DNA of 64,000 nt. Source: Macrostomum lignano. Lineage: Eukaryota. Below the pieces are notes generated by a model, which searched no databases, was not told the origin of the DNA, and saw only the letters and a program-made list of their open reading frames with translations. The position numbers and the translations under genes are program-made. Positions 2,971-55,227 of this stretch are shown here, piece after piece; within the stretch, counting starts at the first letter, position 1, and the number at the start of each line of letters is the position of its first letter. The DNA is taken from positions 1 to 64,000 of the forward strand of contig NIVC01001737.1 of assembly GCA_002269645.1 (NCBI GenBank), given 5' to 3'.

Positions 2971-3038
2971 TCAGAGCTTTGATAGCTCTCTCGTAGTCTT
3001 CAACCACTTTAAACAAGCAGCATAGCTGATTTACCACA

Positions 3039-16894: not shown

Positions 16895-17398
16895 TTAACG
16901 AACTGGTGGCCCACTTCGGTCAATCGGCAATTCGTTACACCTCAGATCGAAATAGAATGAGGGAAAGTCTGCGTACTTTTGTAGAAGCTGTTCGAAGTCG
17001 GCTCTGTTAACCAGACTTCGATGGCGAGCTGCGTGGCGGTGACGAAGTCGCCGCTGTCGCCTCTGTCGCCGCTGTCTGCGTCTTCGCACCCGGGAGGAAC
17101 TGCTTTGCCGCGGCTCAGTTTCCGCTGATGCCGGCTGCGATTTGAGCACCTTACCGGCTGTTCGCTTCTGCTTTAGCAACAGAATAAACTTAGCCGCGTC
17201 AACAGTCTCGAGCTGCTTGAGCTTGTCCTTGAAGTAAAACGATCGCATCTCATCTCCCAGTTCATTCACGGCCATATCTTGCTTCAGTGCTGACAAAACT
17301 TGCTTCTTGACGCGGCGCCACAGACGCGCCTCCTGAATTGTTCGCATCGAAGGCAACGATACGTTGAGCTCGGTGCGGAATAAGTTGAGCACTTTCGG
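16895..17398 (-). CDS. fgf: FGF-like gene, coding exon 4 (terminal; basic tail)
   Basis: Acceptor cccacag|CCG AAA GTG, phase 0, matching the donor after AAG at 17744. Open to TAA at 16895 (PKVLNLF...RVRRRRQRRQRRQRRLRHRH...GPPVR*). An AATAAA lies at 16640-16635 on the minus strand. Confidence 0.7.
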   Translation of the reverse strand, partial: PKVLNLFRTELNVSLPSMRTIQEARLWRRVKKQVLSALKQDMAVNELGDEMRSFYFKDKLKQLETVDAAKFILLLKQKRTAGKVLKSQPASAETEPRQSSSSRVRRRRQRRQRRQRRLRHRHAARHRSLVNRADFEQLLQKYADFPSFYFDLRCNELPIDRSGPPVR

Positions 17399-17743
17399 CT
17401 GTGGGATAACAAATACGGTGTAAATTATATTCTTTTAGACAAGGGTTCAGTTGTTTTGTACGAGACAGCAGATCGCCCACAGCCCCTAAGAAGTTTTATC
17501 CCCTGAGCAACTCACAAAGGGTGTACAATGGCCCTGACTTTTCATGGTCAGGCTTGTGGGTTGGCCTTCATAGGCGAGAATTGCGAATTCCCTGGCTCAA
17601 GCCCCAAATTAATATGAGCGCAATTAAAACCAGTGACTTTGGTTCTCAGCGAGATTTTAACTCAAAAGTAAACTAATGATTCCTTAGGATGAATTTTTTG
17701 TAATTTAACAATTGTATCTAGTCGTATAATCAAAGTTTCACAC

Positions 17744-18607
17744 CTTCCGTCCTCCTTCGAAACCTGCTCGAACGCCGAGTTTGTCGCGAAAGAACTTCCT
17801 CAAATTACGCTGGTGCCGACGGAATCTTCGCTTGTGAGCTCGGACTTGGCTGCGCTGGCGAACTTTCCGGCAGAGAAGGCGCGAACTCGAGCGTCTGGAC
17901 TGCAGGTTCATTACCAAGTCCGCCACGGCAGCCGACTGAAAGGTCACTGCCAACTCTTCTCGAACACAGCGCCCTCGGTTGTACAGAAAATGGTAGGTCA
18001 CCTCCCTCAGGTAGCCGTTCAATGCCTTTTCCCCAGCTGCAATATCTGCGGTGGACAGGCCGGCTTGCTGAGCGCGACGCTTCAAAGCACGTCTCAGCTG
18101 GCGGAGTTGGCGCAGCACGCCAGACAAACGACGGCTTCGGTGGTTGATGACGGACTGGATCAGCGACTTCGCTCGGTTGCAGTCTTCGGGCGCGAATTTT
18201 TCGTTGACATGCTTGATAGCGGCTTGTACGAGAGTACTGTTGGACAGTTTCACCGACTTGTCACCGATTTTTAATGCTGCCGAGTGAGAAGCCGATGGGC
18301 TCGGCACTGCCGGTTGCTCGTCCGGAAAGTCGCCCAGATTGAACGCCGGCCGGTAGGGAACGGCGTGGAATCGAACCCGGGCCCCGCCGCGTAGTCTGCC
18401 GCCGCGAGCCGCGTGAGCCGCATTGGGTTTAAAGCCCAGGTACCAGCGAGTTCGGGTGGAGTTGCCACTACCGGTCTCGGAGACGTCCGGGTAGAAGGCC
18501 TGGTAGAAACTGAACTGCTGGTGCGCCTGGTCCGTTTTGGGCAGCTGTCTGGGTAGAATGAGGCCACGCCAGAGGCAATCCTCGGGCAGTTTCCCGTCTT
18601 GTTTCAT
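17744..18607 (-). CDS. fgf: FGF-like gene, coding exon 3 (C-terminal half of the FGF core plus tail)
   Basis: Acceptor aatccag|ATG AAA; KLPEDCLW and RWYLGFKPN...GRLRGG resemble FGF8 KGKDCVF and WYMAFTRKGRPRKG; candidate donor AAG|gtgtga. Confidence 0.8.
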
Positions 18608-18761
18608 CTGGATTACACGAGGGTGGGATATTCTAGGTCAGAATAGTAGTTTTCTGATGTACGCTCGTAGGTTAGAGAAGTGATAACGATGTTCAAGACG
18701 TGAAGGACGATGGTGAGTGATGTACTTCACTACTAATAATCAGTTCAGCAGACTCTCTTAC

Positions 18762-18925
18762 CACAGTGTGCACAAATCCCTCCGAGTTCATACAGATGTA
18801 GCGCTGATTAAAGTAGCCACGGATCAAGAATTTATACTCGTTGGGCGCCGGCGGAAACAGGAAGTCGATAGGAAGTCGGAGCTTGTCGTGCGTAACCGGG
18901 TCCAGCACCATTTGGATTTCCAAAG
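18762..18925 (-). CDS. fgf: FGF-like gene, coding exon 2
   Basis: ttgcag|CT TTG...ACT GTG|gtaaga. (A)LEIQMV...FLIRGYFNQRYICMNSEGFVHTV matches the FGF motif IRG....YICMNxxGxL. The phase 1/phase 0 boundaries sit at the canonical FGF intron positions. Confidence 0.88.
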
Positions 18926-19869
18926 CTGCAAGTTAGAAGCGAATTGTGAAATCCGGAAATAAGGCTGGTAACACAAATGCTGGCATAATTATGAGAGCAG
19001 AAATTGCAAAAATCCAATAGATTGATTGATGACCCGGCAGGTAAGCGGCATTGCCTGCCCCTCTCAGACAACCGGCCCTAACCCTGGATTCGAAAGGTTC
19101 CACTACCCCACCTGGTGCAAAAATTGTGCCAAAAATCGGCAAAGACAGAAAAGAAGATGATAAAGGGTAGATAAAACCCCGGATCTGTTGCCTGGAGGAT
19201 TATACGAAGCGCCAGTGACATAAGGGGTGAAGTATTGCGCGATCTTTTGAAGCAACTGTACCTGAGGTTGCCTACTGCCTACCAACACTAGGGCCGAGTT
19301 GGAGGTAACGGCGGCAGGTAAAAGTAATAAATCCAAAGTTGGAGAACCGTGGATTCGGGCTTGGCTATTAGGCCCTGACCTCTCAGCTACAGTCGGTTTT
19401 TCCGCCCTTCAATTTAGCACGGGGGTTCTTGTTTAGGCGCCAGCAAAAGGTTGGGAAACCCGATCTCTTTCATGCTTCCGAAACAAAGAAAAATGGTTGC
19501 CAACTAATAGATTCTTTCTATTGACTTATAAGTTCTTCCAGTTTCCGTTTTTCAGTTCTCTCTATAGTAGTCATCCAACCATTTTTGCTGCCGCTGAAGA
19601 AAGTAAACCGCCCACGCTTTCTGTCACCTCTTCATCGGCTATTAGATTGACAGACAACGCAGACAGACACATCCTGTTGATGCTTCATCAGTAGCAGTTT
19701 CTGCTTTGTCTGCAATTTGCTTAGTTCCCGCCCACGCAGAATCAGCGGGATAGAGATGATGCGGGACCCACCTCAGAGCTGGCTGCTGCTAGGACAAAAC
19801 AACTAAGACTACTGCGCGTGGGCTCCAATAGTCTTTGTTACTCTGTTGTTTCTACGAGTTTTTCTTGTA

Positions 19870-22800
19870 GTTTTAGTCCTCAACTTCCCGCAGTTCCAGT
19901 TCCAGTCCTCTACTTCCCTCAGTTCCAGTCCTCAACTTCCCGCAGTTCCAGTTCCAGTCCTCAACTTCCCGCAGTTCCAGTCCTCAACTTCCCGCAGTTC
20001 CAGTCCTCAACTTCCCGCAGTTCCAGTTCCAGTCCTCTACTATCCTCAGTTCCAGTTCCAGTCCTCTACTATCCTCAGTTCCAGTCCTCTACTATCCTCA
20101 GTTCCAGTCCTCTACTATACTCAGTTCCAGTCCTCTACTTCCCTCAGTTCCAGTCCTCTACTATACTCAGTTCCAGTCCTCTACTTCCCTCAGTTCCAGT
20201 CCTCTACTTCCATCAGTTCCAGTCCTCTACTTCCCTCAGTTCCAGTCCTCTACTATCCTCAGTTCCAGTCTCCAACTTCCGTCAGTTCTAGTCCTCTACT
20301 TCCCTCGGTTCCAGTCCTCTACTATCCTCAGTTCCAGTCCTCTACTATCCTCAGTTCCAGTCCTCTACTATCCTCAGTTCCAGTCCCCAACTTCCGTCAG
20401 TTCCAGTCCTCAACTATCCTCAGTTCCAGTCCTCTACTATCCTCAGTTCCAGTCCTCTACTTCCCTCAGTTCCAGTCCTCTACTTCCCTCAGTTCCAGTC
20501 CTCTACTATCCTCAGTTCCAGTCCTCTACTATCCTCAGTTCCAGTCCTCTACTATACTCAGTTCCAGTCCTCTACTTCCCTCAGTTCCAGTCCTCTACTT
20601 CCCTCAGTTCCAGTCCTCTACTATCCTCAGTTCCAGTCCTCTACTATCCTCAGTTCCAGTCCTCTACTATACTCAGTTCCAGTCCTCTACTTCCCTCAGT
20701 TCCAGTCCTCTACTATCCTCAGTTCCAGTCCTCTACTATACTCAGTTCCAGTCCTCTACTTCCCTCAGTTCCAGTCCTCTACTATCCTCAGTTCCAGTCC
20801 TCAGTTCCTCAGTTCCAGTCCTCTACTATCCTCAGTTCCAGTCCTCTACTTCCCTCAGTTCCAGTCCTCTACTATCCTCAGTTCCAGTCCTCTACTTCCC
20901 TCAGTTCCAGTCCTCTACTATCCTCAGTTCCAGTCCTCTACTATCCTCAGTTTCAGTCCTCTACTATACTCAGTTCCAGTCCTCTACTATCCTCAGTTCC
21001 AGTCATCTACTATCCTCAGTTTCAGTCCTCTACTATCCTCAGTTCCAGTCCCCAACTTCCGTCAGTTCCAGTCCTCTACTATCCTCAGTTCCAGTCCCCA
21101 ACTTCCCTCAGTTCCAGTTCTACTATCCTCAGTTCCAGTCCTCTACTATACTCAGTTCCAGTCCTCTACTATACTCAGTTCCAGTCCTCTACTATCCTCA
21201 GTTCCAGTCTCCAACTTCCGTCAGTTCCAGTCCTCTACTATCCTCAGTTCCAGTCCCCAACTTCCGTCAGTTCCAATCCTCTACTATCCTCAGTTCCAGT
21301 CCCCAACTTCCCTCAGTTCCAGTTCTACTATCCTCAGTTCCAGTCCTCTACTATCCTCAGTTCCAGTCCTCTACTATACTCAGTTCCAGTCCTCTACTTC
21401 CCTCAGTTCCAGTCCTCTACTTCCCTCAGTTCCAGTCCTCTACTATCCTCAGTTCCAGTCCTCTACTATCCTCAGTTCCAGTCCTCTACTATACTCAGTT
21501 CCAGTCCTCTACTTCCCTCAGTTCCAGTCCTCTACTATCCTCAGTTCCAGTCCTCTACTATCCTCAGTTCTAGTCCACAACTTCCGTCAATTCCAGTCCT
21601 CTACTATCCTCAGTTCCAGTCCTCTACTTCCCTCAGTTCCAGTCCTCTACTATCCTCAGTTCCAGTCCTCAGTTCCTCAGTTCCAGTCCTCTACTATCCT
21701 CAGTTCCAGTCCTCTACTTCCCTCAGTTCCAGTCCTCTACTATACTCAGTTCCAGTCCTCTACTTCCCTCAGTTCCAGTCCTCTACTATCCTCAGTTCCA
21801 GTCCTCTACTATCCTCAGTTTCAGTCCTCTACTATACTCAGTTCCAGTCCTCTACTATCCTCAGTTCCAGTCCTCTACTATCCTCAGTTCCAGTCCTCTA
21901 CTATCCTTAGTTCCAGTCCTCTACTATACTCAGTTCCAGTCCTCTACTTCCCTCAGTTCCAGTCCTCTACTATACTCAGTTCCAGTCCTCTACTTCCCGC
22001 AGTTCCAGTCCTCTACTTCCATCAGTTCCAGTCCTCTACTTCCCTCAGTTCCAGTCCTCTACTATCCTCAGTTCCAGTCTCCAACTTCCGTCAGTTCTAG
22101 TCCTCTACTTCCCTCGGTTCCAGTCCTCTACTATCCTCAGTTCCAGTCCTCTACTATCCTCAGTTCCAGTCCTCTACTATCCTCAGTTCCAGTCCCCAAC
22201 TTCCGTCAGTTCCAGTCCTCAACTATCCTCAGTTCCAGTCCTCTACTATCCTCAGTTCCAGTCCTCTACTTCCCTCAGTTCCAGTCCTCTACTTCCCTCA
22301 GTTCCAGTCCTCTACTATCCTCAGTTCCAGTCCTCTACTATCCTCAGTTCCAGTCCTCTACTATACTCAGTTCCAGTCCTCTACTTCCCTCAGTTCCAGT
22401 CCTCTACTTCCCTCAGTTCCAGTCCTCTACTATCCTCAGTTCCAGTCCTCTACTATCCTCAGTTCCAGTCCTCTACTATACTCAGTTCCAGTCCTCTACT
22501 ATCCTCAGTTCCAGTCCTCTACTATCCTCAGTTCCAGTCCTCTACTATACTCAGTTCCAGTCCTCTACTTCCCTCAGTTCCAGTCCTCTACTATCCTCAG
22601 TTCCAGTCCTCAGTTCCTCAGTTCCAGTCCTCTACTTCCCTCAGTTCCAGTCCTCTACTATCCTCAGTTCCAGTCCTCTACTTCCCTCAGTTCCAGTCCT
22701 CTACTATCCTCAGTTCCAGTCCTCTACTTCCCTCAGTTCCAGTCCTCTACTATCCTCAGTTCCAGTCCTCTACTTCCCTCAGTTCCAGTCCTCTACTATC

Positions 22801-25800
22801 CTCAGTTCCAGTCCTCTACTATCCTCAGTTTCAGTCCTCTACTATACTCAGTTCCAGTCCTCTACTATCCTCAGTTCCAGTCATCTACTATCCTCAGTTT
22901 CAGTCCTCTACTATCCTCAGTTCCAGTCCCCAACTTCCGTCAGTTCCAGTCCTCTACTATCCTCAGTTCCAGTCCCCAACTTCCCTCAGTTCCAGTTCTA
23001 CTATCCTCAGTTCCAGTCCTCTACTATACTCAGTTCCAGTCCCCAACTTCCCTCAGTTCCAGTCCCCAACTTCCCTCAGTTCCAGTTCTACTATCCTCAG
23101 TTCTAGTCCACAACTTCCGTCAATTCCAGTCCTCTACTATCCTCAGTTCCAGTCCTCTACTTCCCTCAGTTCCAGTCCTCTACTATCCTCAGTTCCAGTC
23201 CTCAGTTCCTCAGTTCCAGTCCTCTACTATCCTCAGTTCCAGTCCTCTACTTCCCTCAGTTCCAGTCCTCTACTATCCTCAGTTCCAGTCCTCTACTATC
23301 CTCAGTTCCAGTCCTCTACTATCCTCAGTTCCAGTCCTCTACTATCCTCAGTTTCAGTCCTCTACTATACTCAGTTCCAGTCCTCTACTATCCTCAGTTC
23401 CAGTCCTCTACTATCCTCAGTTCCAGTCCTCTACTATCCTTAGTTCCAGTCCTCTACTATACTCAGTTCCAGTCCTCTACTTCCCTCAGTTCCAGTCCTC
23501 TACTATACTCAGTTCCAGTCCTCTACTTCCCTCAGTTCCAGTCCTCTACTTCCATCAGTTCCAGTCCTCTACTTCCCTCAGTTCCAGTCCTCTACTATCC
23601 TCAGTTCCAGTCTCCAACTTCCGTCAGTTCTAGTCCTCTACTTCCCTCGTTCCAGTCCTCTACTATCCTCAGTTCCAGTCCTCTACTATCCTCAGTTCCA
23701 GTCCTCTACTATCCTCAGTTCCAGTCCCCAACTTCCGTCAGTTCCAGTCCTCAACTATCCTCAGTTCCAGTCCTCTACTATCCTCAGTTCCAGTCCTCTA
23801 CTTCCCTCAGTTCCAGTCCTCTACTTCCCTCAGTTCCAGTCCTCTACTATCCTCAGTTCCAGTCCTCTACTATCCTCAGTTCCAGTCCTCTACTATACTC
23901 AGTTCCAGTCCTCTACTTCCCTCAGTTCCAGTCCTCTACTTCCCTCAGTTCCAGTCCTCTACTATCCTCAGTTCCAGTCCTCTACTATCCTCAGTTCCAG
24001 TCCTCTACTATACTCAGTTCCAGTCCTCTACTTCCCTCAGTTCCAGTCCTCTACTATCCTCAGTTCCAGTCCTCTACTATACTCAGTTCCAGTCCTCTAC
24101 TTCCCTCAGTTCCAGTCCTCTACTATCCTCAGTTCCAGTCCTCAGTTCCTCAGTTCCAGTCCTCTACTTCCCTCAGTTCCAGTCCTCTACTATCCTCAGT
24201 TCCAGTCCTCTACTTCCCTCAGTTCCAGTCCTCTACTATCCTCAGTTCCAGTCCTCTACTTCCCTCAGTTCCAGTCCTCTACTATCCTCAGTTCCAGTCC
24301 TCTACTTCCTCAGTTCCAGTCCTCTACTATCCTCAGTTCCAGTCCTCTACTATCCTCAGTTTCAGTCCTCTACTATACTCAGTTCCAGTCCTCTACTATC
24401 CTCAGTTCCAGTCATCTACTATCCTCAGTTTCAGTCCTCTACTATCCTCAGTTCCAGTCCCCAACTTCCGTCAGTTCCAGTCCTCTACTATCCTCAGTTC
24501 CAGTCCCCAACTTCCCTCAGTTCCAGTTCTACTATCCTCAGTTCCAGTCCTCTACTATACTCAGTTCCAGTCCCCAACTTCCCTCAGTTCCAGTCCCAAC
24601 TTCCCTCAGTTCCAGTTCTACTATCCTCAGTTCTAGTCCACAACTTCCGTCAATTCCAGTCCTCTACTATCCTCAGTTCCAGTCCTCTACTTCCCTCAGT
24701 TCCAGTCCTCTACTATCCTCAGTTCCAGTCCTCAGTTCCTCAGTTCCAGTCCTCTACTATCCTCAGTTCCAGTCCTCTACTTCCCTCAGTTCCAGTCCTC
24801 TACTATCCTCAGTTCCAGTCCTCTACTTCCCTCAGTTCCAGTCCTCTACTATCCTCAGTTCCAGTCCTCTACTATCCTCAGTTTCAGTCCTCTACTATAC
24901 TCAGTTCCAGTCCTCTACTATCCTCAGTTCCAGTCATCTACTATCCTCAGTTTCAGTCCTCTACTATCCTCAGTTCCAGTCCCCAACTTCCGTCAGTTCC
25001 AGTCCTCTACTATCCTCAGTTCCAGTCCCCAACTTCCCTCAGTTCCAGTTCTACTATCCTCAGTTCCAGTCCTCTACTATACTCAGTTCCAGTCCCCAAC
25101 TTCCCTCAGTTCCAGTCCCCAACTTCCCTCAGTTCCAGTTCTACTATCCTCAGTTCCAGTCCTCTACTATACTCAGTTCCAGTCCTCTACTATACTCAGT
25201 TCCAGTCCTCTACTATCCTCAGTTCCAGTCTCCAACTTCCGTCAGTTCCAGTCCTCTACTATCCTCAGTTCCAGTCCCCAACTTCCGTCAGTTCCAATCC
25301 TCTACTATCCTCAGTTCCAGTCCCCAACTTCCCTCAGTTCCAGTTCTACTATCCTCAGTTCCAGTCCTCTACTATCCTCAGTTCCAGTCCTCTACTATAC
25401 TCAGTTCCAGTCCTCTACTTCCCTCAGTTCCAGTCCTCTACTTCCCTCAGTTCCAGTCCTCTACTATCCTCAGTTCCAGTCCTCTACTATCCTCAGTTCC
25501 AGTCCTCTACTATACTCAGTTCCAGTCCTCTACTTCCCTCAGTTCCAGTCCTCTACTATCCTCAGTTCCAGTCCTCTACTATCCTCAGTTCCAGTCCTCT
25601 ACTATCCTCAGTTCCAGTCCTCTACTATCCTCAGTTCTAGTCCACAACTTCCGTCAATTCCAGTCCTCTACTATCCTCAGTTCCAGTCCTCTACTTCCCT
25701 CAGTTCCAGTCCTCTACTATCCTCAGTTCCAGTCCTCAGTTCCTCAGTTCCAGTCCTCTACTATCCTCAGTTCCAGTCCTCTACTTCCCTCAGTTCCAGT

Positions 25801-28800
25801 CCTCTACTATCCTCAGTTCCAGTCCTCTACTTCCCTCAGTTCCAGTCCTCTACTATCCTCAGTTCCAGTCCTCTACTATCCTCAGTTCAGTCCTCTACTA
25901 TACTCAGTTCCAGTCCTCTACTATCCTCAGTTCCAGTCCTCTACTATCCTCAGTTCCAGTCCTCTACTATCCTCAGTTCCAGTCCTCTACTATACTCAGT
26001 TCCAGTCCTCTACTTCCCTCAGTTCCAGTCCTCTACTATACTCAGTTCCAGTCCTCTACTTCCCTCAGTTCCAGTCCTCTACTTCCATCAGTTCCAGTCC
26101 TCTACTTCCTCAGTTCCAGTCCTCTACTATCCTCAGTTCCAGTCCTCTAACTTCCGTCAGTTCCAGTCCTCTACTTCCCTCAGTTCCAGTCCTCTACTAT
26201 CCTCAGTTCCAGTCCTCTACTATCCTCAGTTCCAGTCCTCTACTATCCTCAGTTCCAGTCCCTAACTTCCGTCAGTTCCAGTCCTCACTATCCTCAGTTC
26301 CAGTCCTCTACTATCCTCAGTTCCAGTCCTCTACTTCCCTCAGTTCCAGTCCTCTACTTCCCTCAGTTCCAGTCCTCTACTATCCTCAGTTCCAGTCCTC
26401 TACTATCCTCAGTTCCAGTCCTCTACTATACTCAGTTCCAGTCCTCTACTTCCCTCAGTTCCAGTCCTCTACTTCCCTCAGTTCCAGTCCTCTACTATCC
26501 TCAGTTCCAGTCCTCTACTATCCTCAGTTCCAGTCCTCTACTATACTCAGTTCCAGTCCTCTACTTCCTCAGTTCCAGTCCTCTACTATCCTCAGTTCCA
26601 GTCCTCTACTATCTCAGTTCCAGTCCTCTACTTCCCTCAGTTCCAGTCCTCTACTATCCTCAGTTCCAGTCCTCAGTTCCTCAGTTCCAGTCCTCTACTA
26701 TCCTCAGTTCCAGTCCTCTACTTCCCTCAGTTCCAGTCCTCTACTATCCTCAGTTCCAGTCCTCTACTATCCTCAGTTCCAGTCCTCTACTATCCTCAGT
26801 TCCAGTCCTCTACTATCCTCAGTTCCAGTCCTCTACTATACTCAGTTCCAGTCCTCTACTATCCTCAGTTCCAGTCATCTACTATCCTCAGTTTCAGTCC
26901 TCTACTATCCTCAGTTCCAGTCCCCAACTTCCGTCAGTTCCAGTTCTACTATCCTCAGTTCCAGTCCTCTACTATACTCAGTTCCAGTCCCCAACTTCCC
27001 TCAGTTCCAGTCCCCAACTTCCCTCAGTTCCAGTTCTACTATCCTCAGTTCTAGTCCACAACTTCCGTCAATTCCAGTCCTCTACTATCCTCAGTTCCAG
27101 TCCTCTACTTCCCTCAGTTCCAGTCCTCTACTATCCTCAGTTCCAGTCCTCAGTTCCTCAGTTCCAGTCCTCTACTATCCTCAGTTCCAGTCCTCTACTT
27201 CCCTCAGTTCCAGTCCTCTACTATCCTCAGTTCCAGTCCTCTACTTCCCTCAGTTCCAGTCCTCTACTATCCTCAGTTCCAGTCCTCTACTATCCTCAGT
27301 TCAGTCCTCTACTATACTCAGTTCCAGTCCTCTACTATCCTCAGTTCCAGTCATCTACTATCCTCAGTTTCAGTCCTCTACTATCCTCAGTTCCAGTCCC
27401 CAACTTCCGTCAGTTCCAGTCCTCTACTATCCTCAGTTCCAGTCCCCAACTTCCCTCAGTTCCAGTTCTACTATCCTCAGTTCCAGTCCTCTACTATACT
27501 CAGTTCCAGTCCCCAACTTCCCTCAGTTCCAGTCCCCAACTTCCCTCAGTTCCAGTTCTACTATCCTCAGTTCCAGTCCTCTACTATACTCAGTTCCAGT
27601 CCTCTACTATACTCAGTTCCAGTCCTCTACTATCCTCAGTTCCAGTCTCCAACTTCCGTCAGTTCCAGTCCTCTACTATCCTCAGTTCCAGTCCCCAACT
27701 TCCGTCAGTTCCAGTCCTCTACTATCCTCAGTTCCAGTCCCCAACTTCCCTCAGTTCCAGTTCTACTATCCTCAGTTCCAGTCCTCTACTATCCTCAGTT
27801 CCAGTCCTCTACTATACTCAGTTCCAGTCCTCTACTTCCCTCAGTTCCAGTCCTCTACTTCCCTCAGTTCCAGTCCTCTACTATCCTCAGTTCCAGTCCT
27901 CTACTATCCTCAGTTCCAGTCCTCTACTATACTCAGTTCCAGTCCTCTACTTCCCTCAGTTCCAGTCCTCTACTATCCTCAGTTCCAGTCCTCTACTTCC
28001 CTCAGTTCCAGTCCTCTACTATCCTCAGTTCCAGTCCTCAGTTCCTCAGTTCCAGTCCTCTACTATCCTCAGTTCCAGTCCTCTACTTCCCTCAGTTCCA
28101 GTCCTCTACTATCCTCAGTTCCAGTCCTCTACTTCCCTCAGTTCCAGTCCTCTACTATCCTCAGTTCCAGTCCTCTACTATCCTCAGTTTCAGTCCTCTA
28201 CTATACTCAGTTCCAGTCCTCTACTATCCTCAGTTCCAGTCATCTACTATCCTCAGTTTCAGTCCTCTACTATCCTCAGTTCCAGTCCCCAACTTCCGTC
28301 AGTTCCAGTCCTCTACTATCCTCAGTTCCAGTCCCCAACTTCCCTCAGTTCCAGTTCTACTATCCTCAGTTCCAGTCCTCTACTATACTCAGTTCCAGTC
28401 CCCAACTTCCCTCAGTTCCAGTCCCAACTTCCCTCAGTTCCAGTTCTACTATCCTCAGTTCCAGTCCTCTACTATACTCAGTTCCAGTCCTCTACTATAC
28501 TCAGTTCCAGTCCTCTACTATCCTCAGTTCCAGTCCCCAACTTCCCTCAGTTCCAGTTCTACTATCCTCAGTTCCAGTCCTCTACTATACTCAGTTCCAG
28601 TCCCCAACTTCCCTCAGTTCCAGTTCTACTATCCTCAGTTCCAGTCCTCTACTATACTCAGTTCCAGTCCTCTACTATCCTCAGTTCCAGTCCCCAACTT
28701 CCGTCAGTTCCAGTCCTCAACTATCCTCAGTTCCAGTCCTCTACTTCCCTCAGTTCCAGTCCTCTACTATCCTCAGTTCCAGTCCCCAACTTCCGTCAGT

Positions 28801-28805
28801 TCCAG
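19870..28805. repeat. 8.9-kb satellite, 23-bp monomer CAGTTCCAGTCCTCTACT(ATC/TCC/ATA)CT, with higher-order structure, inside FGF intron 1
   Basis: Direct reading; diagnostic variant blocks recur (see findings). Confidence 0.97.
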
Positions 28806-29309
28806 TGCCCTATTAACTTAGCTTTAATACTTATCGGTCAGCCTGTTTCGCCTATCGATCTTTCAATCCAATCATAGAATAAAATATAGCTAATTCTTTC
28901 GCCATAGTAATATTTTACCATTTCGAGTTATTATTACATGTACCAGTATAGCAGAAAAATTAAATAATTTGAGGGGGTGTGAAAGCGCGACGCTGTTTAG
29001 TCGGTGTTTCTTGAAGGCAGGCCAAAAAATTCGTCCCCAAGAAAATTCTTAGAAAGACAAACTGAGCAGCTGATTGAGCCGACTGAGAAGATAAGGTCTA
29101 TGTACAACTCGGAAGGTTAAAGTTTTACGAACTCAACCAGCAATCTCTACTGTACTTTCATTTATAAATTCCGGCGAGAAGTAACACACTGTAGCTCAAG
29201 GTTCGTCGTAGCCTTGCAAACATATTTTCATGAAACAAAACTGACTTGTACCTTAACTGTACATTGATCTGTTTTAATTATGATACAGTTTCTTACATAA
29301 TGCAGTTGG

Positions 29310-29865
29310 CAGAGAGGGTATAGAGGGTATGAAGGATATGGAGGTTATGGAAGATATGGAGGGTATGGAGGGTATGGAGGGTATTAGGATATAGAGGGTA
29401 TGGAGTGTATGGAGGGTATGGAGGGTATGGAGGGTATGGAGGGTATGGAGGGTATGGAGGGTATGGAGGGTATGGAGAGTATGGAGGGTATTAGGATATG
29501 GAGGGTAATTAGAATATGGAGGGTATGGAGTGTATGGAGGGTATGGAGGATATGGAGGGTATGGAGTGTATGGAGGGTATGGAGGGTATGGAGGGTATGG
29601 AGGGTATGGAGGGTATGGAGGGTATGGAGTGTATGGAGGGTATGGAGGGTATGGAGGGTATGGAGGGTATGGAGGGTATGGAGGGTATGGAGGGTATGGA
29701 GGGTATGGAGGGTATGAGGTATGGAGGATATGGAGGGTATGGAGGATATGGAGGGTATGGAGGGTATGGAGGTTATGGAGGGTATGGAGGGTATGGAGGG
29801 TATGGAGGTTATGGAGAGTATGGAGGATATGGAGGTATGGAGGGTATGGAGATTATGGAGGCTAT
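29310..29865. repeat. 9-bp repeat TATGGAGGG
   Basis: Direct reading. Confidence 0.95.
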
Positions 29866-30549
29866 GAGGCAGAGATTCATCATCAGGAAGAAGTGCAAAG
29901 AAACTAATTTAACCAAACGGGCGGCGAAATGTAAGAAAATGCAATTACATTTTTATCTCTTCGAATATCCGCGGTTATTACACTTTCACGCGCAGGATTA
30001 ACAGGATTTCGAGCCTGCGCTACACCGTGAGAATTCAGCCTGGAACTGGCCAATTAGCAGAGCAATTCAAGTGTGGCAACTGTCAGGTGACAATCTATTG
30101 TTAACCAGCTCCATCACCTCACTCGGCTCTTTGCAGACGCTGACAAAAATATAGAACCATAAAATGGCGATTACTAATAAACCGATAGTAAAGAGCTCAT
30201 TTTCTTGCAATCGTAAAATGATAAAACTATACAGGTAAGTCGTTACACTCCTAGTTTTGCAAAGGTTTTATTACAGCTGGTATTGTATTACACAGGTAGA
30301 ACTTGTGCCAATGAGTTGCAACCTGGCTTTTAATAGTCTGTAGTCTTGACGACGGTGCCAAATGAATTAGTCTGACAACACCTCAGATTTTGCTGCAGGT
30401 TTACAAGATGGACGCGAGAGGTGTTGGAGAGAGCAATTAAGTAGTAAAGAGTCTTCTTTAGGGTTCATTTGAGTTCTTGTGACTTGAGAAAAGATCCAGA
30501 CAGTTGCACTATGAACAGATTTAGATTCAGCAAGAGAGTCGGTGAAACT

Positions 30550-31180
30550 CTAGGGAGAATCTAGGGAGATCTAGGGAGAGAATCTAGGGTGAGAATCTAG
30601 GGAGAATCTAGGGAGAATCTAGGGTGAGTATCTAGGGAGAATCTAGGGTGAGAATTAGGAAGAATCTAGAGTAGATAATCAGGCAGAATCTAAGGAGAAT
30701 CTAGGGAGAGTCTAGGGTGAGAAGCAGGGAGAATCTAGGGTGAGAGTCAGGTAGGATCTAGGGTGAGAAGCAGGGAGAATCTAGGGTGAGAATCAGGGAG
30801 AATCTAGGGTGAGAATCAGGGAGAATCTAGGGTGAGAATCAAGTGTGAGAATTAGGGAGAATCTAGAGTAGATAATCAGGCAGAATCTAGGGTGAGAATC
30901 TAGGGAGATCTAGGGTGAGAAGCAGGGAGAATCTAGGGTGAGAGTCAGGTAGGATCTAGGGTGAGAAGCAGGGAGAATCTAGGGTGAGAATCAGGGAGAA
31001 TCTAGGGTGAGAATCAGGGAGAATCTAGGGTGAGAATCAAGGGTGAGAGTTAGGGAGAATCTAGAGTAGATAATCAGGCAGAATCTAGGGTGAGAATCTA
31101 GGGAGATCTAGGGTGAGAATCTAGGGTGAGAATCTAGGGAGAATCTAGGGTGAGAAGCAGGGAGAATCTAGGGTGAGAGT
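30550..31180. repeat. GAGAATCTAGGG(T)-based minisatellite
   Basis: Direct reading. Confidence 0.9.
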
Positions 31181-31905
31181 TCAGGATTAGAACCAGTGAG
31201 AGTCTGCAGTGATAATGATGAAAATATACATTACAGAGAAAGCCAGTCACTCAGACCACAGAAAAGATGTTTTCCACTTTAATAGAAATGGTCTAAAAAC
31301 AAGCAGTTTAGTGCTTGTTGGCGAACAAGTTGCTAAAAGTTGTTTTCCAGTGCCAAAGAAGCGTACAATGCATGTCAGAACTGGCCAAAGACGCTCTTCT
31401 GAACTCTCTCTCCACCCCTGCGTCACCCTACCCACCTGGCCGCTCAAACACTAGGCCTAAAATGAGCTGTTAGCATGCAACTTTAATTTTCTGCCCTTAC
31501 CTTGCTCGTCTCGCAGTCGCGCTAAGCCACCTTTCTAACTCTAAAGTAATAGCTCAGGATTGCCCCCTGGATTGCTAAATACATTAAGCGAAACAGAAAA
31601 TACTTTAACATAGAATTTTTCTGTTACTGTCTAAACTGAACAGAGCCTGCGAGTGTGGCGTGCGCGCCTTGTCGTTCTATTCATCCATAGCTGATATCAT
31701 AGGACCGCGGCCAGCCCCTCAATGAAGCTTATTGTCTCAACTGTCTGAAGAGGCCACTTGACTAGCTGGACCAGGCAGTATATTGCACAGCTGCTGGCTG
31801 CCTCTGTCTGTGCTTCTGCTTCTTTGGTCCGTCACTTCGACAGCAGCGCAGGCTGGTGCATGCTGGAACAGGGCTGATGAGGCACGCGTGCAGCTGCTTG
31901 CCCGC

Positions 31906-32245
<340 letters not shown>

Positions 32246-32957
32246 GTATCCAACCATCCAACTACAACAAAGTATCTGGCGATCGCCATGCAATTTCAGC
32301 TTTGTTCACCGCCGACTTTGTTCCTGTATTTGTTTTTTCTATTTTAAAACAACTCGTGCAGTCCTAATTGATGGGTGTCAAATTGATGCATGCACTTTCA
32401 CTGACTAGTATATCCATCTTTGTTGTCCAACGCGCATGTCAGATAAGATCGGGAGCCGATTTGTTCTGAACAGCCAGCCTGCCCTCTCTGCCCCGCATAT
32501 TGCTTTGGCACAGGCAATAAGGCCAAGTTGCTTCCACTTGGATCAGAGTAAAAAAATGCAAAAATTTTACGATCTTTTTAAACTAAGGTTCCAGTGCTGT
32601 TTTGCCAAAAATAAGAAATTCAATGCCTTTACAGCTTCCCAAGAGTTTTACCACACTCTCACTTGGCACTGTAATTGCGTAGAGGCGAGAGATGTAAACG
32701 TAGTGTGTGCGTCTGTGGCACAACCCGAAGTCTGTTGAACGCTACACTGGTTGAGAAACCCCCTCAGATGCACTTCTTCCGCTTGGCTCATGCGGCAGAA
32801 ATTTGATCTGCTTGAGCATTGCCGGTCTGCAGAGAGGAATCTGGGTCAGACAGGCTGCAATTATTGCTCCTAGGAAACCCGCCTCAATATGCCAGGATTG
32901 CCAGACGAATTCTGTGTTGCTACCGTCTAATGATTGTTGATAATATTAAGAGAGCTG

Positions 32958-33100
<143 letters not shown>

Positions 33101-35194
33101 GCAGTCTAGTACACAGCTGCACAACTCCTGGACCTCGAAAGGCGCAGAACTGTCAAAGTGTGCGCAGCAGTGATTACTGCGTTTGCTTTACGTGGCTGAA
33201 AATTGTCAGCAAAAACGTTTTTTTGTCCTTCGTTCGGGCGTCCCAAAAGAAGGACAGACAAGCTGGGAGAGACAAAGCGCGGCAGTCAAAAGTCCAACAA
33301 CTTTCTTTCAAGCTTGGCTGCTTGGCTGATAGACCAGAGCGCACAGACGGGGGCTGCAGAGAGAGTAGTTTTGAACTTTTCTATGCTTTAGTCGTTTTTT
33401 TGCGTTTTAACAAAAAAGAAGTGATTTTCATCACTTTGGCCAATACGGTGGGCGGGTCCGGGGATGGTCAGTTGGGCGTCTGTCGCTGACTTTTAAACCT
33501 CTGTTTGAGGTCAGCCTGTCTGGCTGGCTATCTGAATCCTCTCTGCTTGTGCGGCACAGTCCTAACTGAGCTTACTGAGACGATGAGTAGTTCGACTAAC
33601 TAGCGTGACACGAATTTGAATCCGAAAATAGCTCGTAGATAGATTTTCAAATTGTTTTAATTTTTCTAAGAATCGAGGTACAAAGATGCTAAGGTCGCAA
33701 ATTTTGAAACTTTCACAATACCAGGATTTCTCATAATCTCACCTTCTTGACTTCTGAACTGCATTTCGAGCAAAGATGATGCATCGATTCTCAAGTTGAT
33801 CTAGCTTATTTTGTAATTGTAAAGAATTTCTTTTTATTTTACCGTGAGGTGGGGTTTAACCATAAACAAAACTGTCTCAAAACTGCGGAGACACTGAAGA
33901 ACACTTTGGAACTCTCCAGTTGTTCCGACTTTTTGGTTGTCTGACTCATCTCTTAAGTTCGTCTGCCCTCGTTTCTTTTTGTTAACTATTTTTTCTCTGT
34001 CTAGATAAAATCAGACTCTCTTTTTTTGTCTTTCTATCCTCTCACTGGCTTCTGATTGGCTCTTCACTCTGACCTCCTTCCACAGTCGCGCTTCCACTCC
34101 TCTTTATCTGCGTACGACCCACCCCCTCTTTCTGCGTACGACCCACCCCTCCTTATCTGCTTACGAAACACTCCCTCGGCATCTCCTTATCTACGTACGA
34201 CCCACCCCCTCCTTATCTGCGTACGATTCGCACCATTAATTGATAAATTATTAAAGTTGTATGGGCCTTGTGCCCAGTCCCTAATATTATTTAATTTAAA
34301 TCCTAACTCTTACTCAAGCTAATTCAGTATAGCCAATTCACAACTTCGTCTGTTTTGTTATTTTTCTACACCGGTTTCCGGTAGCTTTTCTAAAAAAATA
34401 GCTTAACGATCCCAAGACGTCCATGACAGATTCAAGCTAACCAGTCATTCAAAGAAAACACCAATTGTCCTGTCAATAATTCTATAGTCTCAGCAGTAGC
34501 TTAACACACTCCCTCATTTAGTCCTGTATAGTATACTCGTACAATAATTTCTGCTTACTATGTGGGCGGTCAGCCCTAGCGGCACCAGATGACACCCTTT
34601 GTCTCTAGCTGGCTGGGTTCAAGACACGAATAAAGTACCGAAGACGAAACCCACTGTTCCACTTTTTGTACGGATGCGCGCATTTTTTGTCCTAGCAATG
34701 GCTACGGGTTTCAATGAACGGAGGTAAGTAAAACGATCAAAGGGAATTCGCCGCCCCTCCCCCGCGGCCCGCAGTCTCTATGTTGATGCGCTGTCCAGCG
34801 TCTGACCTCCAAGAAGCCCTCTAGTCAAACAGCAAGAGTGAGAGAGAGAGAGAGAGAGCCATATAAACAGGTCAAGGGATTTTCTAAACTTTTTTCTTCC
34901 AGTGTTTCTTTTTCATTTTTGCTTTGCTTTCTTTTGGAGATAAAAAAGGAAGGGCGAGTAAGGCTACTGGACTTTCTTCCCAACCTGAATGACTTTGTGG
35001 GGAACTGCATTTAGTGCAGTTTTTTGTGTTAGTAAGAAGCTAATAGCTGCTTTTTAAAGGTAGGATTCGTCACCTGCGCTAAATTAGAAAGCACTGGTTT
35101 TTTTTGAGGAATTCTTACGGTGGTTTGTTCAGTTAGGGTTTCTTTAAAACTCTAAGTACTGGCGGGTTTCTGGCCCTCCATTAGCTCTCTGTCA

Positions 35195-36325
35195 CCTTTC
35201 GATTAGCTTCCTGTCACTGTGCTATTAGCTTCCTGTCACTGTGCTATTAGCTTCCTGTCACTGTCCTATTAGCTTCCCGTTACTGTCCTATTAGCTTCCT
35301 GTCACTGTGCTATCAGCTTCCCGTTACTGTCCTATTAGCTTCCTGTCACTGTGCTATTAGCTTCCTGTCACTGTCTTATTAGCTTACTGTCACTGTCTTA
35401 TTAGCTTACTGTCACTGTCTTATTAGCTTACTGTCACTGTCTTATTAGCTTACTGTCACTGTCTTATTAGCTTTCTGTCACTGTCTTATTAGCTTACTGT
35501 CACTCTCTTATTAGCTTACTGTCACTGTCTTATTAGCTTACTGTCACTGTCTTATTAGCTTTCTGTCACTCTCCTATTAGCTTCCCGTTACTGTCCTATT
35601 AGTTTTCCGTTGCTGTCCTATTAGCTTCCCGTTATTGTCCTATTAGCTTCCTGTCACTCTCCTATTAGCTTCCCGTTACTGTCCTATTAGCTTCCCGTTG
35701 CTGTCCTATTAGCTTCCCGTTGCTGTCCTATTAGCTTCCCGTTGCTGTCCTATTAGCTTCCCGTTGCTGTCATATTAGCTTCCCGTTGCTGTCCTATTAG
35801 CTTCCCGTTGCTGTCCTATTAGCTTCCCGTTATTGTCCTATTAGCTTCCTGTCACTCTCCTATTAGCTTCCCGTTGCTGTCCTATTAGCTTCCCGTTGCT
35901 GTCCTATTAGCTTCCCGTTACTGTCCTATTAGCTTCCCGTTGCTGTCCTATTAGCTTCCCGTTGCTGTCCTATTAGCTTCCCGTTGCTGTCCTATTAGCT
36001 TCCCGTTGCTGTCCTATTAGCTTCCCGTTGCTGTCATATTAGCTTCCCGTTGCTGTCCTATTAGCTTCCCGTTACTGTCCTATTAGCTTCCCGTTGCTGT
36101 CCTATTAGCTTCCCGTTACTGTCCTATTAGCTTCCCGTTGCTGTCCTATTAGCTTCCTGTCACTGTCCTATTAGCTTCCCGTTGCTGTCCTATTAGCTTC
36201 CCGTTGCTGTCCTATTAGCTTCCCGTTACTGTCCTATTAGCTTCCTGTCACTGTGCTATTAGCTTTCTGTCACTGTTCTATTAGCTTTCTGTCGCTGTCC
36301 TATTAGCTTCCTGTCACTCTCCTAT
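35195..36325. repeat. 22-bp minisatellite TATTAGCTTCCCGTTGCTGTCC
   Basis: Direct reading. Confidence 0.95.
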
Positions 36326-36405
36326 CATCGGCTCCCATTACACGCACCCCAGTATAAGAACAAAGGAGTAGACAGTGATCACGGGGCGCACAAACAGAAG
36401 CTCAC

Positions 36406-36697
36406 CATTTCCAGGCACCGGATCCAGCCGAATGCTAGCAATTACTTCATTGCGACGATTGATCTCAAGCGTCAAACTTTTCCCCCTGATTGTCAGTTGA
36501 AGGATCTCCGCTCGACCAGTAGTGATCCCGATGGCCACCTCTGATGGACTCCGCCTGTACTTGGAGGCCGGCACTATGATCAATCGCTCCAGGCTAGCTT
36601 GAGTAGTAGTTGCTGGGGCTATCGGCTTAGCAACTAAACAACAATAATTAGTGGCTAAAGCCGCAACAAAAAGTGCGTACAGATTAATAGGAATCAT
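36406..36697 (-). CDS. fgf: FGF-like gene, putative coding exon 1 (signal peptide plus first beta strands)
   Basis: MIPINLYALFVAALATNYCCLVA is signal-peptide-like. RAEILQLTIRGKSLTLEINRRNEVIASIRLDPVPGN aligns by eye with FGF8 [32 protein letters not shown]. The strong donor AAT G|gtgagc is phase 1, matching the acceptor at 18925. Confidence 0.68.
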
Positions 36698-36731: not shown

Positions 36732-36739
36732 TATTTATA
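36732..36739 (-). promoter_or_regulatory. Possible TATA box (TATAAATA) upstream of the FGF start codon
   Basis: About 35-40 nt 5' of the ATG; motif match only, in AT-rich DNA. Confidence 0.25.

Positions 36740-48533: not shown

Positions 48534-55227
<6,694 letters not shown>

What the first reader, a model, noticed from the sequence alone, without database searches (positions are those of the whole stretch)
16895..36697. Hidden, highly divergent FGF ligand gene split by a 17.5-kb satellite-filled intron
Four separated ORF fragments join into one secreted protein of about 607 aa. A signal-peptide exon (36697-36406, phase 1 donor) joins the YICMN exon (18925-18762), then the DCLW/WYLG exon and a terminal exon. 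Both cysteines typical of the FGF8/17/18 subfamily are present and the first two introns fall at canonical FGF positions (seen in sequence plus family knowledge). Linking exon 1 across 17.5 kb is inference. Invertebrate FGF ligands are often missed by similarity searches, so automated annotation could split or lose this gene.
Basis: partly seen in the sequence, partly recalled or inferred. Interest (0 to 1): 0.8.

Follow-up and report, generated by a model that had tools for sequence, protein, structure and literature searches.

The report
Divergent FGF-like gene in a flatworm
The four exons do join into a real, already annotated but unnamed 607-residue secreted protein of the flatworm Macrostomum lignano. 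Its N-terminal half is most likely a very divergent FGF8-like growth factor, which matters because flatworm FGF ligands have been hard to find.

Summary
Four minus-strand exons (36697-36406, 18925-18762, 18607-17744, 17398-16895) with GT/AG borders give 607 aa. This exact protein is already in GenBank as hypothetical protein BOX15_Mlig024534g2 (PAA64592.1) of Macrostomum lignano, so the gene is not hidden, only unnamed. The window is NIVC01001737.1:1-64000.

Intron 1 is 17,480 bp, 68% tandem arrays. That is the genomic background here, not a special feature.

FGF identity is probable (about 0.75) but below standard thresholds.
- Pfam FGF is the only family hit on the native sequence, at 12.5 bits against a cut-off of 24.
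- FGF8b is the only PDB hit (E 0.43).
- Exhaustive HMMER over 1.84 billion proteins finds no relative.
- With two lineage-specific loops removed, Pfam FGF reaches 30.3 bits. With three removed it reaches 33.3 bits, and 24 of 25 PDB hits are FGFs.
- A long-gap-tolerant profile alignment scores 37.6 bits against at most 26.5 in 2,500 shuffles.
- Intron 2 lies exactly where a fish fgf8 intron lies, in the same phase. Intron 1 shares the phase.
- Both FGF8-type cysteines and a signal-peptide-like N-terminus are present.

The fold test failed to decide (AlphaFold pLDDT 35 and 42). A conserved Glu in the C-x-F-x-E motif is Gly. Verdict: a new member of a known kind, of moderate interest.

The parts
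36406..36697 (-). Exon 1: start codon, hydrophobic signal-peptide-like N-terminus (aa 1-23), N-terminal extension, and putative strands beta1-beta3 of the FGF-like core (from about aa 64). Ends in phase 1 (first base of codon Ala98).
   Evidence: Identical in the second genomic copy. The CDS start of annotated gene BOX15_Mlig024534g2 is at this coordinate.
36732..36739 (-). TATAAATA motif 35-42 nt upstream of the ATG, preceded by a pyrimidine run and followed by AG. It could be a TATA box or a trans-splice acceptor. This was not resolved.
   Evidence: Read directly from the sequence. Its function is inference only.
18926..36405 (-). Intron 1, 17,480 bp, GT...AG, phase 1. About 68% of it is tandem arrays.
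   Evidence: The same intron is about 4.9 kb shorter in the second copy, which has different array copy numbers.
19897..28806 (.). 23-bp satellite (CAGTTCCAGTCCTCTACTATCCT), 389 copies, inside intron 1. Strongly strand-skewed in composition.
   Evidence: There are only about 115 copies in the paralogous or allelic locus L001.
35180..36325 (.). 22-bp minisatellite (52 copies) that starts about 80 bp downstream of the exon 1 donor, inside intron 1.
   Evidence: Also present, with 51 copies, in L001.
29314..33100 (.). Further arrays inside intron 1: 9-mer x62 (29314-29866), 23/46-mer (30550-31178), CTAT x86 (31906-32250), TAGA x36 (32958-33100).
18762..18925 (-). Exon 2, 164 nt (aa 98-152): putative beta4, a lineage-specific 19-20 aa insertion, beta5 (KFLIRG), beta6 (YICMN, 18800-18786, Cys142) and beta7. 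Ends in phase 0, exactly 8 codons after YICMN.
   Evidence: The fish fgf8 exon 2 is 107 nt with the same phases and ends 8 codons after YICMN. The best-scoring Pfam, PDB, BLASTP and hhalign segment lies here.
18356..18607 (-). 5' part of exon 3 (aa 153-236): the rest of the FGF-like core. It holds DCLW (Cys163, 18577-18575), two inserted loops (about aa 172-182 and 193-203), WYLGF (18445-18431), the Gly-rich basic segment ARGGRLRGG, and RFHAVP.
17744..18355 (-). Rest of exon 3 (aa 237-440): start of the long basic C-terminal tail. It includes a furin-like RSRR at aa 309-312 (18139-18128).
   Evidence: No Pfam family was found for the tail.
16895..17398 (-). Exon 4 (aa 441-607 plus TAA): end of the tail, with an arginine run RVRRRRQRRQRRQRRLRHRH.

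Best explanation
This is a transcribed, four-exon gene of the flatworm Macrostomum lignano. It is annotated as hypothetical protein BOX15_Mlig024534g2, with a near-identical second copy, BOX15_Mlig028597g1. It encodes a secreted precursor.

The N-terminal part, about aa 64-236, is a highly divergent member of the FGF family and is closest to the FGF8/17/18 type. It carries three lineage-specific loop insertions of 10-20 residues that break up the similarity. A 360-residue, very basic C-terminal tail follows it.

Proposed mechanism (inferred, not shown):
- The signal peptide directs the protein into the secretory pathway.
- The FGF-like core folds as a beta-trefoil.
- The basic glycine-box segment and the basic tail hold it on heparan sulfate.
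- The core activates a flatworm FGF receptor tyrosine kinase, or is captured by FGFR-like decoys.
- The tail may be removed at dibasic or furin-like sites, as reported for the long-tailed Drosophila FGF8-like ligands Pyramus and Thisbe (my own knowledge of the literature).

The satellite-rich 17.5-kb first intron is ordinary for this repeat-rich genome and has no demonstrated role.
For: Gene model:
- Canonical splice sites and an intact frame.
- Exact identity to an annotated CDS built from RNA evidence.
- Exon 2 cannot start a protein by itself.

Secretion: hydrophobic stretch at aa 4-23.

FGF homology, from unbiased searches on the native sequence:
- FGF (PF00167) is the only Pfam family returned out of 24,736: E 0.15 for the whole protein, E 0.025 for aa 98-173.
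- FGF8b (2FDB) is the only hit among 177,635 PDB sequences, E 0.43.

FGF homology, from targeted comparisons:
- BLASTP against FGF8b gives 31.2 bits, pairwise E 6e-6.
- hhalign against 20 FGF8/17 sequences gives P 1.5e-4, probability 52%.

Allowing for long loops:
- Removing only the two C-terminal loops raises Pfam FGF to 30.3 bits, E 4.6e-7 (cut-off 24).
- Removing three loops gives 33.3 bits over profile positions 14-106 of 124.
- The reversed sequence gives nothing. Permuting the segment order drops the score to 18 bits.
- With the three-loop construct, 24 of 25 PDB hits are FGFs: FGF8b best at E 0.002, then FGF7/1, 1, 18, 19, 21 and 13.
- A profile alignment with cheap long gaps scores 37.6 bits. 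Shuffles give 13-14 +/- 2, with a maximum of 26.5 in 2,500 global and local shuffles (Gumbel p 1e-7 to 2e-6). Unrelated real proteins give 11-20 bits.

Independent gene-structure evidence:
- In a real fish fgf8 gene the introns are phase 1 and phase 0, and the second lies 8 codons after YICMN.
- The flatworm gene has phase 1 and phase 0 introns, and the second also lies exactly 8 codons after YICMN.
- Exon 2 is 164 nt against 107 nt in the fish, a difference of 19 whole codons.

Cysteines: both cysteines invariant in FGF8/17 (C109, C127) align with Cys142 and Cys163.
Against: - On the unedited sequence the Pfam score (12.5 bits) is half the gathering threshold.
- Exhaustive phmmer of the core against 1.84 billion representative proteins found nothing outside M. 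lignano at E <= 0.001. There is therefore no ortholog series and no deep alignment.
- AlphaFold2 gave no confident fold. Single-sequence pLDDT was 35. With an FGF8 alignment it was 42, and only aa ~129-165 exceeded 70. Foldseek found nothing better than E 0.1.
- The PROSITE-type FGF signature (pattern recalled from memory) is not matched, while 117 of 120 FGF8/17 sequences match it.
- The Glu of C-x-F-x-E, invariant in the FGF8/17 set, is Gly here (DCLWRG).
- The N-terminal third of the trefoil (exon 1) contributes little score.
- The position of intron 1 relative to beta4 is ambiguous. Two alignments score 33.3 and 32.6 bits, and one of them puts the FGF8 intron 11 codons away.
- The loop deletions were chosen with FGF8 in mind. 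The shuffle test was built to correct for that freedom.
- Receptor binding, secretion and tail cleavage are all untested.
Confidence: 0.75

Rival explanations
1. It is an FGF-derived protein that no longer acts as a secreted receptor ligand. It might work inside the cell or in the nucleus, like vertebrate FGF11-14 or the nuclear pool of C. elegans LET-756 (my own knowledge). Alternatively it might be a matrix-bound protein with a new partner. The arginine-rich tail would then act as a nuclear or nucleolar targeting or nucleic-acid-binding segment.
For: - The Glu of C-x-F-x-E, invariant in FGF8/17, is replaced by Gly, and the FGF signature pattern is not matched.
- Three large loop insertions sit in the core.
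- The tail is 23% Lys+Arg and contains RVRRRRQRRQRRQRR.
- No orthologs were detected, which suggests fast evolution.
Against: - A clear hydrophobic N-terminus is followed by a small-residue cleavage context, which fits secretion.
- Both FGF8-type cysteines are kept.
- Long basic tails also occur in genuine secreted invertebrate FGFs such as Pyramus, Thisbe and Branchless (my own knowledge).
Confidence: 0.15
2. It is a lineage-specific secreted protein unrelated to FGFs. On this reading the YICMN...DC...WY.GF similarity and the intron match are coincidences, in a beta-rich protein.
For: - The native Pfam score is below threshold.
- There is no significant hit in 1.84 billion proteins.
- There is no confident trefoil model.
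- hhalign probability is only 52%.
Against: - FGF is the only family returned by Pfam and PDB, and FGF8b is top in both.
- The match is collinear across beta2-beta11 once the loops are allowed for, and is far outside every shuffle null.
- An intron lies at exactly the fgf8 codon boundary and phase. I estimate this at roughly 0.003 by chance for 2 introns in about 666 coding nt.
- Seven different FGF subfamilies hit the loop-deleted construct.
Confidence: 0.1
3. The model is a mis-join: exon 1 belongs to another transcript, and the real protein starts elsewhere, for example at Met103 in exon 2.
For: - Exons 1 and 2 are 17.5 kb apart across satellites.
- I saw no junction reads directly.
- Exon 1 adds little to the FGF score.
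Against: - Two independent loci carry the same four exons and are annotated with the same CDS from a transcript-guided pipeline.
- The phases fit.
- The exon 2 frame is closed 3 codons upstream of its acceptor, so it needs an upstream exon.
- Exon 1 supplies the signal peptide expected for an FGF8-type ligand.
Confidence: 0.03

Closest known systems
Vertebrate FGF8/17/18 subfamily (for example human FGF8b, PDB 2FDB)
   Same: - Best or only PDB hit.
- YICMN motif with the subfamily's cysteine, and a DC..F/W cysteine 18-21 residues later.
- WY(M/L)(A/G)F strand followed by a Gly-rich basic segment.
- Signal peptide.
- Phase 1 and phase 0 introns, the second at the identical codon boundary.
   Different: - About 25% identity over about 100 residues.
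- Three loop insertions of 10-20 aa.
- The Glu of C-x-F-x-E is Gly.
- Exon 2 is 57 nt longer.
- There is a 360-aa basic tail instead of a tail of about 40 aa.
- The native sequence fails the Pfam threshold.
Drosophila Pyramus and Thisbe (FGF8-like ligands of Heartless); also Branchless
   Same: The architecture is the same: a signal peptide, an N-terminal FGF core, then a very long C-terminal extension that in the fly proteins is cleaved off. This comparison rests on my own knowledge of the literature and was not tested here.
   Different: Cleavage of the flatworm tail is only suggested by RSRR-type sites.
Planarian Djfgf (Dugesia japonica; Auwal et al. 2020, cited in PMC8622657 and PMC8224027)
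   Same: It is the one flatworm FGF ligand gene the cited papers mention. It shows that flatworms can have endogenous FGF ligands.
   Different: The exhaustive search found no relative of the M. lignano core in any other flatworm at E <= 0.001. The two may therefore not be recognisably orthologous.

Membership tests
FGF (Pfam PF00167) | The native sequence scores above Pfam's gathering threshold (24 bits). | tested here: not met
   12.5 bits, E 0.15, aa 131-156 only. It is nevertheless the sole family listed.
FGF (Pfam PF00167) | A collinear match to most of the FGF profile once lineage-specific loops are allowed for. | tested here: met
   - 30.3 bits with two loops removed.
- 33.3 and 32.6 bits with three loops removed, covering profile positions 14-106 of 124.
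- The reversed control gives nothing, and the permuted control gives 18 bits.
- The gap-tolerant alignment scores 37.6 bits against a shuffle maximum of 26.5.
FGF (Pfam PF00167) | Beta-trefoil fold of 12 strands. | tested here: inconclusive
   AlphaFold2 pLDDT was 35 (single sequence) and 42 (with an FGF8 alignment, which is not independent). The models are beta-rich but not confident. The best Foldseek hits are FGF19, FGF21 and FGF1, at E 0.1-0.4 and TM <= 0.3.
FGF (Pfam PF00167) | Conserved intron positions and phases of FGF genes: phase 1 before beta4 and phase 0 after beta7. | tested here: met
   Intron 2 has the identical position (8 codons after YICMN) and phase 0 as fish fgf8. Intron 1 has the same phase 1. 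Its position agrees within 0-1 codon under one alignment and is 11 codons off under an equally scoring alternative.
FGF (PROSITE-type signature G-x-[LIM]-x-[STAGP]-x(6,7)-[DENA]-C-x-[FLM]-x-E-x(6)-Y, pattern recalled from memory) | A match to the signature, including the Glu of C-x-F-x-E. | tested here: not met
   There is no match in the flatworm protein, while 117 of 120 FGF8/17 sequences match. The flatworm sequence reads GFVHTVMKQDGKLPEDCLWRG.
Secreted (canonical) FGFs | A cleavable N-terminal signal peptide. | tested here: met
   The hydrophobic stretch at aa 4-23 has mean Kyte-Doolittle hydropathy of 1.5-2.1, with ALA|T and LVA|K as possible cleavage contexts. No SignalP run was available.
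FGF8/17/18 subfamily | The two subfamily cysteines (in YICMN and in DC.F). | tested here: met
   C109 and C127 are invariant in 20 FGF8/17 sequences. They align with Cys142 and Cys163.
FGF8/17/18 subfamily | Phylogenetic grouping with FGF8/17/18/24 rather than other FGF subfamilies. | not tested
   Only vertebrate FGF8/17 sequences could be retrieved. FGF8b is the best PDB hit, but the sequence is too divergent for a reliable tree.
FGF ligands (functional) | Binds and activates an FGF receptor tyrosine kinase, with heparan sulfate. | not testable with these tools
   This needs recombinant protein and receptor assays.

The most novel reading that the evidence does not exclude
This protein is the endogenous FGFR ligand, or one of them, of a basal flatworm. 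It would represent a fast-evolving flatworm FGF8-like lineage whose loop insertions hide it from HMM searches. Its sequence, especially after alignment across Macrostomum species, would then give a profile able to uncover the 'missing' FGF ligands of other flatworms. That includes parasitic species, where none has been found and host FGFs are thought to substitute (PMC6426264, PMC9257043).
Probability: 0.3. Interest if true: 0.7.

Novelty: new member of a known kind. Interest (0 to 1): 0.5.

Why it matters
Flatworms have FGF receptors and FGFR-like patterning genes such as nou-darake, but their ligands have been elusive. Published genome surveys reported no canonical FGF ligands in free-living, trematode or cestode genomes (PMC6426264). 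None is known in schistosomes (PMC9257043). The papers I read mention only one planarian gene, Djfgf (via PMC8622657).

A credible FGF-like ligand in M. lignano would be directly testable, because that species can be made transgenic (PMC5730564). It would give a functional name to two 'hypothetical protein' entries. It also shows a practical route for similar cases: allow for long loop insertions and use intron positions to recognise divergent signalling ligands.

It does not reveal a new kind of molecule. The long satellite-filled intron is not special in this genome.

Tried and rejected
- Whole-protein k-mer/HMMER search returned only the gene itself and a damaged older model.
- Exhaustive phmmer of the core against 1.84 billion representatives found no relatives outside M. 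lignano, so no alignment could be built for structure prediction.
- A third homolog search, with the loop-deleted construct, found nothing. Only 16 k-mer candidates were scored.
- Single-sequence AlphaFold2 was useless, at pLDDT 35.
- AlphaFold2 with a MAFFT alignment to FGF8/17 gave pLDDT 42. The Foldseek search on that model was not significant.
- A vertebrate-only FGF8/17 HMM scored lower (9.7 bits) than Pfam's general FGF model, because that profile is too narrow.
- dN/dS between the two genomic copies cannot be estimated: there are only 5 differences, 2 synonymous and 3 non-synonymous.
- I tried to decide between the two beta4 alignments, and so fix intron 1's exact homology, with Pfam scores. 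They tie at 33.3 and 32.6 bits.
- The Djfgf paper is not held. No paper mentions Mlig028597.
- An Rfam scan of the window found nothing.
- Rejected idea: that the intron's satellites mark something special. The whole 64-kb window carries more than 25 arrays.
Full report
**What is there.** On the minus strand, four segments join into an 1824-nt reading frame: 36697-36406, 18925-18762, 18607-17744 and 16895-17398. Every border has GT and AG, and the intron phases are 1, 0, 0. The product is 607 aa plus TAA. Exon 2 cannot be extended upstream, because a stop lies three codons before its acceptor. It therefore has to be spliced to something upstream.

**The gene is already annotated.** The spliced protein is, residue for residue, GenBank PAA64592.1 (UniProt A0A267EV29), 'hypothetical protein BOX15_Mlig024534g2' of the free-living flatworm Macrostomum lignano. 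It lies on contig NIVC01001737.1 with a gene range of 19,803 bp at the same coordinates as in the window. The window is therefore bases 1-64000 of that contig.

A second locus, NIVC01001181.1 (PAA71187.1, BOX15_Mlig028597g1), carries the same four exons. It has five nucleotide differences in the CDS (2 synonymous, 3 not) and flanks and introns that are 99-100% identical. This fits the known large-scale duplication in this assembly (PMC5730564).

That annotation was derived from genome-guided and de novo transcriptome assemblies. I did not see the reads myself.

So the gene is not hidden, split or lost. It is only unnamed. An older model (UniProt A0A1I8F4U7, 443 aa, 'FH2 domain-containing') alternates between stretches that match this protein and stretches that do not. 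I read that as the same gene with frameshifts.

**The intron.** Intron 1 (18926-36405) is 17,480 bp, and about 11.9 kb of it (68%) is tandem arrays. The arrays are:
- a 23-bp satellite of 389 copies (19897-28806);
- a 22-bp array next to the exon 1 donor (35180-36325);
- a 9-mer array, a 23/46-mer array and tetranucleotide runs.

In the second locus the 23-mer has about 115 copies and the tetranucleotide run about 283, which makes that intron about 4.9 kb shorter. The whole window carries more than 25 such arrays. I therefore read the satellite load as background for this genome, not as a property of the gene.

**Is it an FGF? Results on the native sequence.** Standard tests do not reach significance.
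- Pfam lists FGF (PF00167) as the only family, but at 12.5 bits against a gathering score of 24. The E-value is 0.15 and the match covers aa 131-156. For aa 98-173 alone it gives 15 bits, E 0.025.
- phmmer against all PDB sequences lists a single hit for the core, FGF8b (2FDB), at E 0.43. With the full-length protein it lists nothing.
- An exhaustive phmmer search of the core against 1.84 billion representative proteins finds only the gene itself.
- A direct BLASTP against FGF8b gives 31.2 bits, pairwise E 6e-6. A 22-residue gap splits IRGYFNQRYICMN...DC from WYLGF...G.
- hhalign against 20 vertebrate FGF8/17 sequences gives 52% probability, P 1.5e-4.

**Why the scores are low, and what happens when that is allowed for.** The alignments show three insertions relative to FGF8:
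- about 19-20 aa around beta4/beta5;
- about 10 aa between beta8 and beta9;
- about 10 aa between beta9 and beta10.

Removing only the last two raises Pfam FGF to 30.3 bits (E 4.6e-7), above the curated cut-off. Removing all three gives 33.3 bits over profile positions 14-106 of 124. As controls, the reversed construct hits nothing, and a construct with the same segments in permuted order drops to 18 bits. Collinearity therefore contributes to the score.

With the three-loop construct, phmmer against PDB returns 25 sequences at E <= 10, and 24 of them are FGFs. FGF8b is best at E 0.002, followed by an FGF7/1 chimera, FGF1, FGF18, FGF19, FGF21 and FGF13.

I chose the deletions with FGF8 in view, so I also ran a test that gives the null model the same freedom. 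It is a local profile alignment to an FGF8/17 HMM in which long insertions cost almost nothing.
- The native core scores 37.6 bits.
- 1,000 global shuffles give 13.4 +/- 2.0, with a maximum of 24.9.
- Shuffles confined to windows of 5, 10 or 20 residues give maxima of 22-26.5. Gumbel p lies between 8e-8 and 1.6e-6.
- The reversed sequence gives 14.3 bits.
- Unrelated real proteins from the window (LINE ORF2, integrase, an SLC6 exon) and the protein's own tail give 11-20 bits.
- The alignment covers aa 132-233, about beta5 to beta11.

**Independent evidence from gene structure.** I derived the exon structure of a real fish fgf8 gene (Onychostoma macrolepis, P0059, L002) by tblastn and exact reconstruction.

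| Feature | Fish fgf8 | M. lignano gene |
|---|---|---|
| First core intron | phase 1, in the Ala codon of ...GDAH\|A\|KLIVETD | phase 1, in the Ala codon of ...VPGN\|A\|LEIQMVLD |
| Exon 2 length | 107 nt | 164 nt (107 + 57, i.e. 19 whole codons) |
| Second core intron | phase 0, after YICMNRRGKLIGK | phase 0, after YICMNSEGFVHTV |

The second intron is thus at exactly the same codon boundary, eight residues after YICMN. With two introns in about 666 coding nucleotides of the core, I estimate the chance of an exact hit at about 0.003. This is largely independent of the residue similarity.

For the first intron only the phase is secure. HMMER and Pfam alignments put LEIQMVLD on beta4, so the intron agrees within 0-1 codon. 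MAFFT instead puts KLRLPIDF on beta4, which places the intron 11 codons upstream. The two alternatives score 33.3 and 32.6 bits.

**Other family features.**
- Both cysteines invariant in FGF8/17 (C109, C127) align with Cys142 and Cys163.
- The N-terminus (aa 4-23) is strongly hydrophobic, as expected of a signal peptide.
- Against membership: the PROSITE-type FGF signature (pattern recalled from memory) is not matched, while 117 of 120 FGF8/17 sequences match it.
- Also against: the Glu of C-x-F-x-E, invariant in the FGF8/17 set, is Gly here.

**Fold.** AlphaFold2 without an alignment gave pLDDT 35. With a MAFFT alignment to 32 FGF8/17 sequences, which is not an independent test, it gave pLDDT 42, and only aa ~129-165 exceeded 70. 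Foldseek on that model found nothing better than E 0.1. The top hits were FGF19, FGF21 and FGF1 at TM <= 0.3. Both models are beta-rich, but neither supports or refutes a trefoil.

**The tail.** Residues 246-607 are 23% Lys+Arg and match no Pfam family. They contain furin-like R-x-[KR]-R sites, the first being RSRR at aa 309-312, and an arginine run near the C-terminus. A signal peptide, an N-terminal FGF core and a long tail is the layout of the Drosophila FGF8-like ligands Pyramus and Thisbe. Their tails are reported to be cleaved (my own knowledge, not tested here).

**Conclusion.** I put about 0.75 on this being a genuine, highly divergent FGF-family protein of FGF8 type that is secreted. 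I give lower confidence, about half of that, to it still acting as a receptor ligand.

Rivals:
- an FGF-derived protein with a non-ligand role (0.15);
- an unrelated lineage-specific secreted protein (0.1);
- a mis-joined model (0.03).

**Context.** Published surveys state that canonical FGF ligands had not been identified in free-living flatworm, trematode or cestode genomes (PMC6426264). None is known in Schistosoma mansoni (PMC9257043). One planarian gene, Djfgf, was described in 2020 (cited in PMC8224027 and PMC8622657). A candidate in M. lignano, a species in which transgenesis has been established (PMC5730564), is therefore useful. It is a new member of a known family, not a new kind of system.

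Noticed in passing
window 1815-2678 (+): An ORF with an integrase core domain (Pfam rve, 41 bits). This is a retrotransposon pol fragment in the GC-rich first 2.7 kb of the window.
   Followed up: partly
window 61098-63650 (+): An 850-aa ORF with endonuclease (Exo_endo_phos_2) and reverse transcriptase (RVT_1, 111 bits) domains. This is a LINE-type non-LTR retrotransposon ORF2, apparently intact over this stretch.
   Followed up: partly
window 52975-53532 (-): A large exon of a sodium:neurotransmitter symporter (SLC6/SNF, 248 bits, profile positions 151-327 of 524). It belongs to a neighbouring gene on the same strand as the FGF-like gene. It is flanked by GTCT and AACT tetranucleotide arrays.
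   Followed up: partly
window 40987-46127 (-): The GenBank annotation places a 372-aa gene with no Pfam domain just upstream of the FGF-like gene. The interval is largely covered by minisatellites (20-mer at 41838-42418, 27-mer at 42760-43563, 40-mers at 43771-45038). The model may be a repeat-derived ORF on a transcribed repeat. The FGF-like gene's tag ends in 'g2', which I think, from memory of this assembly's gene naming, marks it as the second gene of a transcriptional unit. I did not check that reading or which gene is g1.
   Followed up: no
whole window; e.g. 3034-3515, 5303-6532, 10211-11174, 49055-51064, 55887-56697: More than 25 distinct mini- and microsatellite arrays lie in 64 kb. 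Many have extreme strand skew in composition (GC skew up to +/-0.63). They create long spurious ORFs in several frames, for example 49051-51162 (703 aa).
   Followed up: partly
window 19897-28806 vs L001 19284-21942; window 31906-33100 vs L001 13614-14744: The two near-identical copies of the locus are 99-100% identical in exons and unique intron sequence, but differ strongly in array copy number. The 23-mer has 389 against about 115 copies. The CTAT/ATCT run has about 122 against about 283 copies. Either the arrays turn over fast or the assembly collapsed them.
   Followed up: partly
protein P0002 (UniProt A0A1I8F4U7): An older 443-aa model alternates between stretches that match this protein and stretches that do not. 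I read it as the same gene with frameshifts. It is named 'FH2 domain-containing protein', which looks like a misannotation.
   Followed up: partly
window 17813-18274 (+): A 153-aa antisense ORF lies inside exon 3 of the FGF-like gene. It is most likely a by-product of the GC-rich coding sequence.
   Followed up: no
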